NCBI GenBank assembly: GCA_037379345.1
Contig: CM074512.1
Coordinates: 61,959,597 to 62,023,596, forward strand
Reading direction: 5' to 3'
Length of the DNA: 64,000 bases
Origin: Perna viridis
Lineage: Eukaryota
Positions 43,033 through 46,842 of this stretch are shown piece by piece. Position numbers and translations under genes: made by a program. The first letter of the stretch is position 1, and every line of letters begins with the position of its first letter. Under the pieces are notes generated by a model. The model did no database searches. It was not told where the DNA came from and was given only the letters and a program-made list of their open reading frames with translations.

Positions 43033-45686
43033 TAACTCTTAAAGAAGATGATAAAATCCTTAGCATGGTCACCTGCTTATAGCCCATGATGACTTATACA
43101 TCTTTACCAAGTATGTTAGTGATATTTCTTAAAGTGAAAAGGGGAGACCATGTTGAAAAAAATGTCAATAAAAGGGAATAACTAATAAATTGGATGATGA
43201 AATTCTTCAAAGGGTCATTCTGTAAAAGTCCATAATGAGATTTGTCAATGGTCCAAATTTGGTAATGATGTATCAAAAGATGATGAAACAGAGCCATGTC
43301 AAATTAAATGGTAGAAGAAAAAAAAAAACTGACGAAAAAGAATAAGGTCATTCCCATGTAGGGAAAGACTTAAACATACGAAAAACAATAATGTCTGTTC
43401 CATTTAGGAAAAAACAATTATGTCTGTTCCATCTAGGAAAAGACTCTAATTAATTAAAAATAATTTGAAATTAAACATGTATTAAATCCAAAGATGATTA
43501 AAAAAAAAAAGACAGAACAGATAGCCAAGGTAGGGACTTACAAGTTGATTCAACTTTACGTATTATTTTACTCTCTGATTTCATCCTCTTGTCTGGTTGC
43601 CTTTTTTCTTTACAGTTTCCTTTCCAACTTCTTATCACAGCCATTTTATATTTTGACAGAAGCTTTATATAGGGGAATGGATTACTTGCTTAAGCAAAGT
43701 CAACTTCCTGTTCAACATATTTTAAAAATATTTTGATTGTTAACTTTTCTAGAGTTGGGAGCGGGATCTACCCTCATTTTTTTTTATTAAAAGCAGCAGT
43801 TAAAATTGTGATGACATATTTTATCAAATTGTATCATTTGTTTTTCATATTCACTGTAATACTGTGCATTTGGAAAGTTGCAAAAGGATGAAATAGCAAA
43901 GTATTAGATTTCAGACACAGACAGAAAACAAATATTTAAATAAAAAAAGGAAAATGCAATTCAAAAGGTTATCACAGTATGCCAATTAAGACATTGAAAA
44001 TAGTGACAATGACCAACACATAAATGAAAAATATGGTTGTTAACAGTAACTAAAAACACATTGATAAGAAATACAGGATTGAAGAATGTGACTAAATACC
44101 TAACCTGAATTTATAATGGAAAGTAACAGACCATGATTGATACTCAGATGTAACATATGGTATAAAAATTCCAAGTGACAGACTAGGTTAAGCTAGTCAA
44201 CTTTAAACTAAAAAAAAAACTTTAGATGTTTTAAAAACAAGAGGTTGCAGACAGTGGCAAAATGTAAAAAATATTGAATTTTAACTGTTACAAAACTCTT
44301 AATTTAACACATATTATACAAATTTACAATACCATTTAAATAATGAGATGAAATTTTAAATATTTAAGAGTAACGTGATGAGCTTTTAACTTAATGTTAT
44401 TGTGTTATTTTTGAAAGTGACAAGTCCATGAAATTACTTTGAAATCAGAAGAGAACAGTTGAATAATCTTAAGTGCTTTTAACTTAAATTTACATACTTA
44501 ATTATTGTATATTACATGTACATGTACCAACACATTGTAACTTAATCGCCATGTTACTACACCAATGTTGTATATTGTTTATGATATAAAGACGTTGAAC
44601 TATTATTTGTTCAATATAAATATTTTTCTACCTGCTATACAAACTATAGAATTTTAAATAGTTTTGTTGCAAGGTTTTTTTTTATATTTTGTAAGAATTT
44701 TGAATAGTTGCATTGCAAGGTTATTATATTTTATGTGAAATAAGAATTTTAAAGAATTACGAAAATAGAAGGAAAAAAAAAATCAGGTAAAACATGCCTA
44801 TTTTCAACTCATATTAAACTAGATTTAAATAATGAGATAAAATAACATTTCTAATTCTATTCTTTTGAAATCTATTTGTAAACACCATTTGTCATAATGA
44901 GATAAATGTCTTTATTAACATTTAGAGGCTTATAACAATAGATGATTTTCTCTGTCATGTCCTTGTCATATCTAAGTCATATAAATCCAGATTATACTAT
45001 CAAGTGATAGTATCAACAACTTTACCCATTAAACATATAAGAACACTCCAAGGCTGATAACCAAATTACAATAGGCCCCCAAAATCTTGTCAGAAAATTT
45101 GAGATTATTATTGACTTTAGTAAGCCTTAGGCTATTTAGGTATTTTTGCCCATTAAAGAGGATTTAATTTTCTCCCTTCATGGATCCTCTTACTGACTGA
45201 ATTTAAATATTAGGAGTTTTGTGGTGTAAGCTTTGTGAATACCTTAAGTAAATTATTGATCGAAAACTTGAACAAACGTGGCTTGGCGTTTATAAATTGT
45301 GCATTTTTAATCAGTCTGTTTTAAGATGATTTCAATGATATAAATATATCCTGCTCAACAATATAGATTTTTGTGACCTTTATTGAAAAGTGATGCTTTA
45401 TTTCCGTCTTCATCTGTTTAAATTTCCTTAGGTCGTATCAACGTTTTATTATAACAGTAAATTACCAGTATAGAAAAAGCTTTGAAATTGAATCAGTCAG
45501 CTACTTGGTTATGCTGTTAGTCTAGAAATTTGCAGTGTTTGTGTGTATTTATGTGTGCAACTATATTCTAAATAAGGATAAATGCAAGTGGGAATTTATT
45601 TAATGAATACAAAATGGTGGACTGAAAGACAAATGGATTCATAAGACATTACCTGTTAATTGGATTCTCATTACCGAGGGTTGAAC

Positions 45687-45733
45687 ATGTCAAGGAAAAA
45701 GGAGCCTTATTATTATGATCCACACATACCCAG
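45687..45733 (+). CDS. dlg1: Candidate alternative first exon MSRKKEPYYYDPHIP(R), joining the PDZ3 exon at 55583
   Basis: AAC ATG context, upstream in-frame TAA, strong CAG|gtaagg donor in phase 2; the product reads HIPREPRR, like the PSD-95 DIPREPRR motif. Confidence 0.7.
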
Positions 45734-46842
45734 GTAAGGATGGGGTATATGATTGTACTAAATTAGCCTTGGTGTATAAGGTACTCTGCCAGATGGATAG
45801 GGTCCTTAATCCCTATGTTTCTTTTATGATGGTATTTTTTATAACATTTTAGGCTGATAGGTTAATTCATGGAGATAGTGTTGTGTTCCTTTTATCTTAG
45901 TTTTTCATTTTCCATTAACCTTTACATCTTTTCCTTCCATTAATTGAATGAGGAAGCTGTAAAGCAATACACTGATTATTGGTAAAACTCTTCTTGAAAT
46001 GGTATATTATTAGTTGTAAATTCACATTGAAGGAGACATTAAATGTTGTATGGTCACTATAAGGCTATTTATCAGAGTATGTGAATACTGTATTTATTGA
46101 GAGTACATGTACGTTTATGTGTCAATACTGTCTTTATGTTGTCGTGTCTGTGTACTTAATGTTGACCTTTATGAGGATTTGTTTATGATCTGTTAAATAC
46201 ATATATCTACCTGAAGATTAGAATAGAAAAACACCTATAAATATCTGTTTACTCCTATTCTATATTGAAACAACTGCAATCCATTGAAAAAAAATAAAAA
46301 CAAAAATAAACTTCTAGAACAGAAATCAGATAGGAGACAATTAAATAAGACATTATGCAGGTTCCAATTTGCTTTTGTGGATTGACATCTCAGGACTTTT
46401 GAAAGTTTGAAATCATAAATCCACTTACTATGAACCAAAGGCCCTCATTAGGGATTTAGTGTTATGTATTGAAGATCAAAAAGTTCTGGGTCAGATATGG
46501 AGGGTCCTGGACCTCAGTCCTATGCCTATTTCTGTAATAGTTTAGTACATTTGTCACAGTCAGTGCAGACATTAAACATTTTATGTACAGAAACTTAATT
46601 CAATCACTGATAAGTCACATGAAGTACTTCATCTCCACTTAGTAATAAGAATGGGCTACTGTAAGGAAAAATATTCATTGATCAAACCTATTACATTGTG
46701 TATACTGGTAGATAGGAAGTGTTCTGTAACCATCATCTCAGAAATACTGTGAAATATGTCTAAACTGAACCCCTTCTGGACTTCAGGTTTTGTTCAGAAG
46801 GTAGGTGTTAGGTTTACCCAGGTTCAAAAAGTTTGGAAACTG

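What the first reader, a model, noticed from the sequence alone, without database searches (positions are those of the whole stretch)
45250..45740. Hidden internal promoter and first exon predicting a PDZ3-SH3-GUK-only Dlg isoform
Seen: inside the 16-kb intron between the Pro-rich linker exon and PDZ3 there is a CpG-retaining patch (about 7 CpG in 500 bp, where most nearby non-repeat intron has almost none). It has TATAAA at 45291, TCAGT at 45311 and a short uORF (45603-45644). Then comes AAC-ATG MSRKKEPYYYDPHIP with a strong CAG|gtaagg donor in phase 2, the phase of the PDZ3 acceptor. The spliced product [23 protein letters not shown] rebuilds the IPREPRR segment that precedes PDZ3 in PSD-95. 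Known: PDZ3-SH3-GUK forms a supramodule in Dlg MAGUKs. Inference: a short Dlg lacking L27, PDZ1 and PDZ2, with a new basic/Tyr-rich N-terminus, could act as a separate scaffold or competitor.
Basis: partly seen in the sequence, partly recalled or inferred. Interest (0 to 1): 0.8.

Follow-up and report, generated by a model that had tools for sequence, protein, structure and literature searches.

The report
RNA-confirmed internal first exon of Dlg
Inside a 16-kb intron of a mollusc discs-large (Dlg) scaffold gene lies a real, well-expressed alternative first exon that splices onto the third PDZ domain, giving a short PDZ3-SH3-GUK message; truncated scaffold isoforms from internal promoters are already known in other animals, so this is a sound but fairly ordinary find.

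Summary
Every sequence feature is at the stated place: ATG 45687, MSRKKEPYYYDPHIP, CAG|gtaagg donor after 45733 in phase 2, PDZ3 acceptor at 55583, TATAAA 45291, TCAGT 45311, uORF 45603-45644, and 7 CpG.

Transcriptome contigs from three studies match 45216/45226/45265-45734 with no mismatch. In two of them the sequence runs on past 45733 straight into the PDZ3 exon, so the 45733^55583 junction exists in RNA. The contigs end at their 5' side without any foreign sequence. Depth steps from about 3 in the intron to 216 in the exon. Stranded raw reads fit a + strand RNA.

About 18 RNA-like runs from 5 studies hold the exon but not the intron beyond the donor.

- The 5' end lies at or upstream of 45216, so the proposed TATA and Inr sit inside the exon in the deepest runs.
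- The 471-nt leader carries 9 upstream ATGs, the same as intron background.
- The canonical linker exon already ends ...YEELP-R, so the (I/L)P-R-EPRR motif is not unique to the new exon.

Translation, function and conservation in relatives are untested. Internal promoters that make truncated MAGUK or PDZ scaffolds are known (mouse DLG2-eta, whirlin short isoform). I file this as a new member of a known kind.

The parts
45216..45733 (+). Alternative first exon of the Dlg gene. The 5' end is approximate: at or a little upstream of 45216. The 3' end is exact.
   Evidence: contigs X4 45216-45734 (depth 216), X1 45226-45734 (depth 48) and X7 45265-45734 (depth 27), all with 0 mismatches. The contigs terminate at their 5' ends. 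Intron depth is 0-5 on both sides. Stranded raw reads (X21) appear only as first_mate_on-, which in most stranded libraries means a + strand RNA.
45216..45686 (+). 5' leader of 471 nt with 9 upstream ATGs. All uORFs are closed by 45644.
   Evidence: One search lists them. One search shows intron background of 10.3 +/- 3.8 ATG per 471 nt, so there is no depletion.
45687..45733 (+). Coding part of the first exon: MSRKKEPYYYDPHIP plus the first two bases (AG) of an Arg codon. A at -3. This is the first ATG in the PDZ3 frame after the in-frame stop at 45657-45659.
45734..45739 (+). Splice donor gtaagg, used in RNA.
   Evidence: table 7: the loose end behind 45734 in X1 and X4 is identical to the sequence from 55584 onward.
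45261..45675 (+). CpG-retaining patch (7 CpG) lying wholly inside the first exon. Possible mark of promoter-proximal hypomethylation (inferred).
55583..55739 (+). First PDZ3 exon, the acceptor shared by the canonical and the short transcripts.
   Evidence: sequence; Pfam PDZ, 42.5 bits; aligns to DLG4 residues 307-357, E 6e-34.
56563..56665 (+). Second PDZ3 exon.
   Evidence: splice sites; PDZ profile positions 52-81.
57650..57752 (+). PDZ3-SH3 linker exon ([15 protein letters not shown]...LFV-R).
58050..58226 (+). SH3 exon.
   Evidence: (SH3_1, 33.6 bits).
59117..59189 (+). HOOK exon (VDRKERARLKNVKF...).
   Evidence: read from the sequence.
39034..39151 (+). Canonical Pro-rich linker exon. 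It is the alternative upstream partner of the PDZ3 acceptor and ends ...SSYEELP + AG in phase 2.

Best explanation
An internal promoter in the 16.4-kb intron between the Pro-rich linker exon (ends 39151) and the first PDZ3 exon (starts 55583) of a Dlg-type MAGUK gene drives an alternative first exon of about 520 nt (about 45216-45733). Its donor after 45733 is spliced directly to the PDZ3 acceptor.

Shown: the exon, its strand, the junction, the absence of any upstream partner in the contigs, and robust expression across studies.

Inferred: the first in-frame AUG (45687) opens a reading frame [23 protein letters not shown]... that continues through PDZ3, SH3, HOOK and GUK. The protein would lack L27, PDZ1 and PDZ2.

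Inferred from knowledge of Dlg and PSD-95: such a protein keeps the PDZ3-SH3-GUK supramodule and its ligands but cannot cluster PDZ1/2 ligands or multimerise through L27. It would act as a separate adaptor or as a competitor of the full-length scaffold.
For::
- Three contigs from three studies are colinear with 45216/45226/45265-45734 with 0 mismatches.
- X1 and X4 continue past 45733 with GAACCAAGAAGAGTAAGATTAAAGAAAGGC, the PDZ3 exon as read.
- The contigs end at their 5' side (record end), and the end lies further upstream the deeper the run (216x, 48x, 27x). That is the pattern of coverage fading at a transcript end.
- No loose end is listed before 45216-45265.
- Depth is 216 in the exon against 2-5 in the flanking intron, and 0 just beyond the donor.
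- X21 reads fall only in the first_mate_on- class.

the word shares 0.86 (X1) and 0.84 (X7) equal the fraction of 31-mers of the 551-nt query that lie within those runs' exon contigs. About 18 runs of 60-105 Mb of contigs, from 5 studies, hold the exon but not the intron past the donor. The two genome-sized runs hold 0.98-1.00.

the stretch is single-copy, so this is neither a retrocopy nor a repeat.

frame and phases fit.

PDZ, SH3 and GUK lie downstream on the same strand.
Against: - No 5'-end-specific data (CAGE, RACE). Contig ends are only a proxy for a transcription start.
- The leader has 9 upstream ATGs, the same as random intron, so translation of the main ORF could be inefficient.
- The new coding part is only 15 codons, too short to test for coding constraint.
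- Conservation in relatives could not be tested. The one distant relative with 10 kb of upstream sequence showed no counterpart.
- Runs X1, X4 and X7 are labelled 'RNA?' by guess. Their RNA nature is inferred from the intron-less junction and from contig totals of 83-105 Mb.
- I could not see the contigs beyond 30 letters past the junction.
Confidence: 0.82

Rival explanations
1. The transcript is real but essentially non-productive. An intronic promoter or enhancer fires, the RNA picks up a good donor and splices into the host gene, but the uATG-laden leader prevents meaningful synthesis of the short protein. The product would be regulatory or noise.
For: There are 9 upstream ATGs in 471 nt, not depleted against intron background. 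There is no evidence of conservation. The new N-terminus is only 15 residues with no recognisable domain or lipidation signal.
Against: Expression is high and reproducible across 5 studies. The first ATG in the PDZ3 frame has A at -3 and lies 28 nt after the in-frame stop. All uORFs are short (2-20 codons) and end at least 43 nt before it, which permits reinitiation. The exon ends exactly in the phase that preserves PDZ3. If shorter leaders exist (5' ends down to about 45330 are suggested by the word shares), fewer uATGs apply.
Confidence: 0.15
2. The stretch is an internal exon, not a first exon. It would be entered through an acceptor at about 45214 or 45217 (ttag|gag|) from upstream Dlg exons, and the contigs stop there only because the assembly graph branches. 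In a full-length transcript its stops in all frames would make it a poison exon or a translation-restart exon.
For: AG dinucleotides lie at 45212-13 and 45215-16, with a CTGAC branch-point-like motif at 45194-45198. The X4 contig ends at 45216, right next to them.
Against: The X1 and X7 contigs end at 45226 and 45265, not at a common boundary, and the end moves upstream with depth, which fits fading at a transcript end. No upstream loose end is listed. The candidate acceptor (aatttaaatattag) lacks the T-rich tract plus cag/tag seen at the gene's real acceptors I read.
Confidence: 0.06
3. It is a cassette micro-exon (39 nt from the AG at 45693-94, or 56 nt from the AG at 45676-77) inserted between the linker exon and PDZ3.
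For: The 39-nt version would keep phase 2 and read R-KKEPYYYDPHIP-R (my reading).
Against: The contigs are colinear with the genome from 45216 to 45733 with no break or loose end at 45678 or 45695.
Confidence: 0.02

Closest known systems
Mouse DLG2 (PSD-93) eta isoforms from an internal transcription start (PMC6389146)
   Same: It is a Dlg-family gene. An internal start site found by 5'RACE gives an N-terminally truncated protein that keeps the SH3-GK core and is seen at protein level. The paper states that all DLG homologues have multiple isoforms from alternative start sites.
   Different: DLG2-eta lacks all three PDZ domains and starts translation in a shared exon. The mollusc form keeps PDZ3 and has its own 15-codon coding first exon.
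Whirlin short isoform (PMC2873905)
   Same: It is a three-PDZ scaffold. The short isoforms arise from alternative start and/or splice sites, lack the two N-terminal PDZ domains and keep the third. The long and short forms have distinct tissue roles.
   Different: It belongs to a different protein family: not a MAGUK, with no SH3-GUK.
PDZ3-SH3-GK (PSG) supramodule of PSD-95, studied as a unit (PMC9490041) and released by calpain cleavage in vivo (PMC8171078)
   Same: It has the same domain content as the predicted short protein, and it exists as a stable entity.
   Different: It is produced by proteolysis or as a laboratory construct, not by a dedicated promoter and first exon.
Novel promoters and coding first exons in human DLG2 (PMC5518101)
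   Same: These are unannotated intragenic promoters with their own coding first exons in a Dlg gene, found by combining omics data.
   Different: The title establishes the kind of element. I did not read which PDZ domains those isoforms retain, so that comparison is open.

Membership tests
Dlg-subfamily MAGUK gene (DLG1-4 / Drosophila Dlg) | PDZ3 orthologous to DLG PDZ3 | tested here: met
   Pfam PDZ at 42.5 bits and 20.2 bits on the two exons; best solved match is DLG4 residues 307-357, E 6e-34.
Dlg-subfamily MAGUK gene (DLG1-4 / Drosophila Dlg) | SH3 domain downstream of PDZ3 | tested here: met
   SH3_1 at 33.6 bits on 58051-58224.
Dlg-subfamily MAGUK gene (DLG1-4 / Drosophila Dlg) | Guanylate-kinase-like domain at the C-terminus | tested here: met
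   PF00625 matches of 77 and 33 bits on the + strand, 3.4-4.5 kb beyond the window end (G000:C2:62027038-62028073). That the short transcript itself reaches them is inferred.
Dlg-subfamily MAGUK gene (DLG1-4 / Drosophila Dlg) | PDZ1 and PDZ2 upstream in the same gene | tested here: inconclusive
   translations show PDZ-like exons at about 32.1, 34.6 and 35.7 kb (GLGFSIAGG...). They were read by eye and not scanned against Pfam.
Alternative-first-exon (internal promoter) isoform | Exon spliced to the shared downstream exon in RNA | tested here: met
   junction 45733^55583 in contigs of X1 and X4 (two studies).
Alternative-first-exon (internal promoter) isoform | Transcripts begin at the exon, with no upstream exon joined | tested here: met
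   contigs end at 45216, 45226 and 45265 with no upstream loose end, and there is a 50-fold depth step. This is indirect evidence, since contig ends are not capped 5' ends.
Alternative-first-exon (internal promoter) isoform | Mapped transcription start and promoter chromatin (CAGE, H3K4me3, hypomethylation) | not testable with these tools
   The only proxy is the CpG-retention patch.
Alternative-first-exon (internal promoter) isoform | In-frame start codon giving a distinct N-terminus | tested here: met
   ATG 45687, phase 2 donor, phase 2 acceptor.
Alternative-first-exon (internal promoter) isoform | Conservation of ATG, frame and donor in related species | tested here: inconclusive
   Searches gave no informative relative.
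Alternative-first-exon (internal promoter) isoform | Protein product detected | not testable with these tools
   No proteomic or ribosome-profiling data were available.

The most novel reading that the evidence does not exclude
Molluscs make, from a dedicated and separately regulated promoter, a stable PDZ3-SH3-GUK-only Dlg whose short basic and Tyr-rich head (KK...YYYDP, containing a YxxP-type motif) is a regulatory handle. Such a protein would uncouple GUK and PDZ3 partners from PDZ1/2- and L27-dependent clustering, as a genetically encoded counterpart of the calpain-generated PSG fragment of PSD-95.
Probability: 0.25. Interest if true: 0.5.

Novelty: new member of a known kind. Interest (0 to 1): 0.3.

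Why it matters
- It adds a verified promoter, first exon and junction to the model of a key polarity and synapse scaffold gene in a mollusc.
- The PDZ3-SH3-GUK supramodule, usually studied as a construct or a proteolytic fragment, may here be a natural gene product.
- Knock-outs or knock-downs aimed at 5' exons of this gene would leave this form intact, as was found for mouse Dlg2 (PMC6389146).

Tried and rejected
- Cassette micro-exon readings (39 nt from the AG at 45693-94, 56 nt from the AG at 45676-77). Rejected because the contigs are colinear from 45216.
- Chance ORF or silent intron. Rejected.
- Repeat- or TE-derived exon. Rejected because it is single-copy.
- Word search with the first PDZ3 exon, to find protein fragments carrying the new N-terminus (inspected). 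It returned 120 fragments, nearly all gene calls that read into the intron on genomic contigs. None carried YYYDPHIP. It is uninformative because only proteins of 29-91 aa were eligible.
- Large representative search.
- Degenerate DNA pattern for YYYDPHIP+AGGT in JGI metagenome contigs. No hits.
- Genomic contigs of relatives found through P0004 and P0001. L003 (88% identity in exons, introns unalignable) has only 1.9 kb upstream. L002 (77% identity in exons) has 10 kb upstream with no counterpart by tblastn or blastn. The one YDDHI hit has no donor.
- Rfam and tRNA scans of the highly 'expressed' element at 46.85-46.97 kb. Only sub-threshold hits; it is a MITE.
- A full-text search for the string IPREPRR found no paper. 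That PSD-95 reads ...EEDIPREPRR before PDZ3 therefore rests on my own knowledge, not on a tool result.
- Exons were searched one by one, by reference.

Full report
**What is in the sequence.** The window carries a Dlg-type MAGUK gene on the + strand. Translations show PDZ1/2-like exons at about 32-36 kb.

The exons I read in detail are:
- a Pro-rich linker exon at 39034-39151, ending ...PSKPSSYEELP plus AG in phase 2;
- the first PDZ3 exon at 55583-55739, which after ttttatttttcag reads G GAA CCA AGA AGA..., that is [29 protein letters not shown]...;
- the second PDZ3 exon at 56563-56665;
- a linker exon at 57650-57752;
- the SH3 exon at 58050-58226;
- a HOOK exon at 59117-59189.

Pfam confirms PDZ and SH3 on these exons. 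The first PDZ3 exon aligns to residues 307-357 of DLG4. Guanylate-kinase exons lie 3.4-4.5 kb past the window end on the same strand.

All are present at the stated coordinates:
- TATAAA at 45291 and TCAGT at 45311;
- the uORF at 45603-45644;
- aacATGt at 45687;
- MSRKKEPYYYDPHIP;
- CAG|gtaagg with the exon ending at 45733 in phase 2, which matches the PDZ3 acceptor.

**CpG.** The patch has 7 CpG with observed/expected 0.59, against 0.20 for the window. Two denser patches lie in the same intron, and both are interspersed repeats. One is a 685-bp element at 42350-43035 with at least 1221 candidate copies. The other is a 135-bp palindromic MITE at 46840-46975 with at least 1610. Statistically it is modest: about 0.003 per window, or about 0.08 after multiple windows. 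It is far from a CpG island (G+C 31%).

**RNA evidence, the decisive part.** The run search returned about 18 runs with 60-105 Mb of contigs, which is transcriptome-sized. They come from 5 studies and hold 0.71-0.86 of the sampled words of 45250-45800. Two genome-sized runs hold 0.98-1.00.

I laid four runs on 43500-47499. The contigs that cover the exon are:

|---|---|---|---|---|
| X4 | 1273 nt | 216 | 45216-45734 | 0 |
| X1 | 1293 nt | 48 | 45226-45734 | 0 |
| X7 | 500 nt | 27 | 45265-45734 | 0 |

In X1 and X4 the contig continues beyond 45734 with GAACCAAGAAGAGTAAGATTAAAGAAAGGC. That is the PDZ3 exon from 55584; base 45734 (g) equals base 55583. The 45733^55583 junction therefore exists in RNA of two independent studies.

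The word shares agree quantitatively. Exon-only contigs starting at or before 45250, or at 45265, predict shares of 0.87 and 0.845. The observed shares are 0.86 (X1) and 0.84 (X7).

Flanking intron depth is 0-5, and it is 0 just beyond the donor. The stranded raw-read run X21 covers the exon only in the first_mate_on- class, which in most stranded libraries means the RNA is the + strand. The stretch is single-copy in the genome, so a processed retrocopy cannot explain the intron-less form.

**First exon or internal exon?** All three contigs terminate at their 5' side (the record end), and no loose end is listed there. The terminus lies further upstream the deeper the run (45216, 45226, 45265). 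That is what coverage fading at a transcript end looks like. At a splice acceptor or a graph branch, all contigs would stop at one shared position or run into foreign sequence.

AG dinucleotides do exist at 45212-13 and 45215-16. However, the context (aatttaaatattag) lacks the T-rich tract seen at the gene's real acceptors I read. I therefore read the stretch as a first exon whose start lies at or slightly upstream of 45216.

Lower shares in other runs (0.71-0.80) would correspond to contig ends at about 45290-45335. Initiation may be dispersed, or those runs may simply be shallower. Only 5'-end data can tell.

**Coding potential.** After the in-frame stop at 45657-59, the ATG at 45687 is the first in the PDZ3 frame, with A at -3. 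The next in-frame Met lies inside PDZ3, so an intact PDZ3 needs this start.

The 471-nt leader has 9 upstream ATGs. All open short uORFs of 2-20 codons that close by 45644. This count equals intron background of 10.3 +/- 3.8, so there is no sign of selection for a clean leader. Translation is therefore inferred, not shown.

The 15-residue head has no Gly2 or Cys for lipidation. It is basic (RKK) and Tyr-rich, and includes a YxxP-type motif. Any role for it is speculation.

But the canonical exon already gives ...ELP-R-EPRR. That PSD-95 reads EEDIPREPRR at this position rests on my own knowledge and was not verified here (one search found nothing).

**Mechanism proposed.** An internal promoter fires, and the first exon of about 520 nt is spliced to the PDZ3 exon. 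This gives an mRNA encoding a PDZ3-SH3-HOOK-GUK protein without L27, PDZ1 and PDZ2.

From established knowledge of Dlg and PSD-95, the PDZ3-SH3-GK supramodule is a functional unit (PMC9490041). Such a protein would bind PDZ3 and GUK partners without clustering PDZ1/2 ligands, acting as an adaptor or a competitor. This functional step is inference.

**Comparison with what is known.** Internal start sites giving truncated DLG proteins are documented. Mouse DLG2-eta starts from an internal site, keeps only SH3-GK, and persists in a supposed knock-out (PMC6389146). New promoters with coding first exons were found in human DLG2 (PMC5518101). Whirlin has short isoforms that lack PDZ1-2 and keep PDZ3 (PMC2873905). 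A PDZ3-SH3-GK fragment of PSD-95 arises by calpain cleavage in vivo (PMC8171078).

I found no paper describing a promoter-encoded PDZ3-SH3-GUK Dlg in a mollusc. I could not consult this genome's annotation, where an RNA-seq-based pipeline may already list it. I file the finding as a new member of a known kind.

**What could not be done.**
- Conservation: the word search saw only proteins of 29-91 aa. A degenerate pattern scan of metagenome contigs found nothing. The two relatives' contigs I could fetch were either too short or too distant.
- My single read-laying run could not span both upstream partners of the PDZ3 acceptor, so relative usage of the two forms is unknown.
Exons were searched separately by reference.
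I did not verify that.

**Verdict.** The protein and its function remain inferred. Interest is moderate to low.

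Noticed in passing
window 46840-46975: A palindromic MITE of about 135 bp. It matches on both strands and has at least 1610 candidate copies at 91-95% identity. It shows very high summed RNA depth (640-1277) with many different flanks, so it is embedded in many transcripts. It explains the CpG cluster at 46844-46949 and a sub-threshold MIR1511-like Rfam hit.
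   Followed up: partly
window 42350-43035: An interspersed repeat of about 685 bp with at least 1221 candidate copies at 85-88% identity. It is the most CpG-rich stretch of the intron, with 24 CpG.
   Followed up: partly
window 39034-39151 and 45687-45733: Both alternative upstream partners of the PDZ3 exon end with Tyr, acidic residues, then (L/I)-P and a split Arg codon (YEELP-R and YYYDPHIP-R). This may reflect a constraint on the N-terminal extension of PDZ3.
   Followed up: no
window 26.7-28.1 kb, 36.0-37.7 kb, 51.56-51.98 kb: Long tandem repeats inside Dlg introns, visible as periodic translations in all frames.
   Followed up: no
window 43500-45100 (run X4): Low-depth (2-5x) intronic contigs upstream of the new exon in the deepest run. 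They are probably pre-mRNA of the full-length gene.
   Followed up: no
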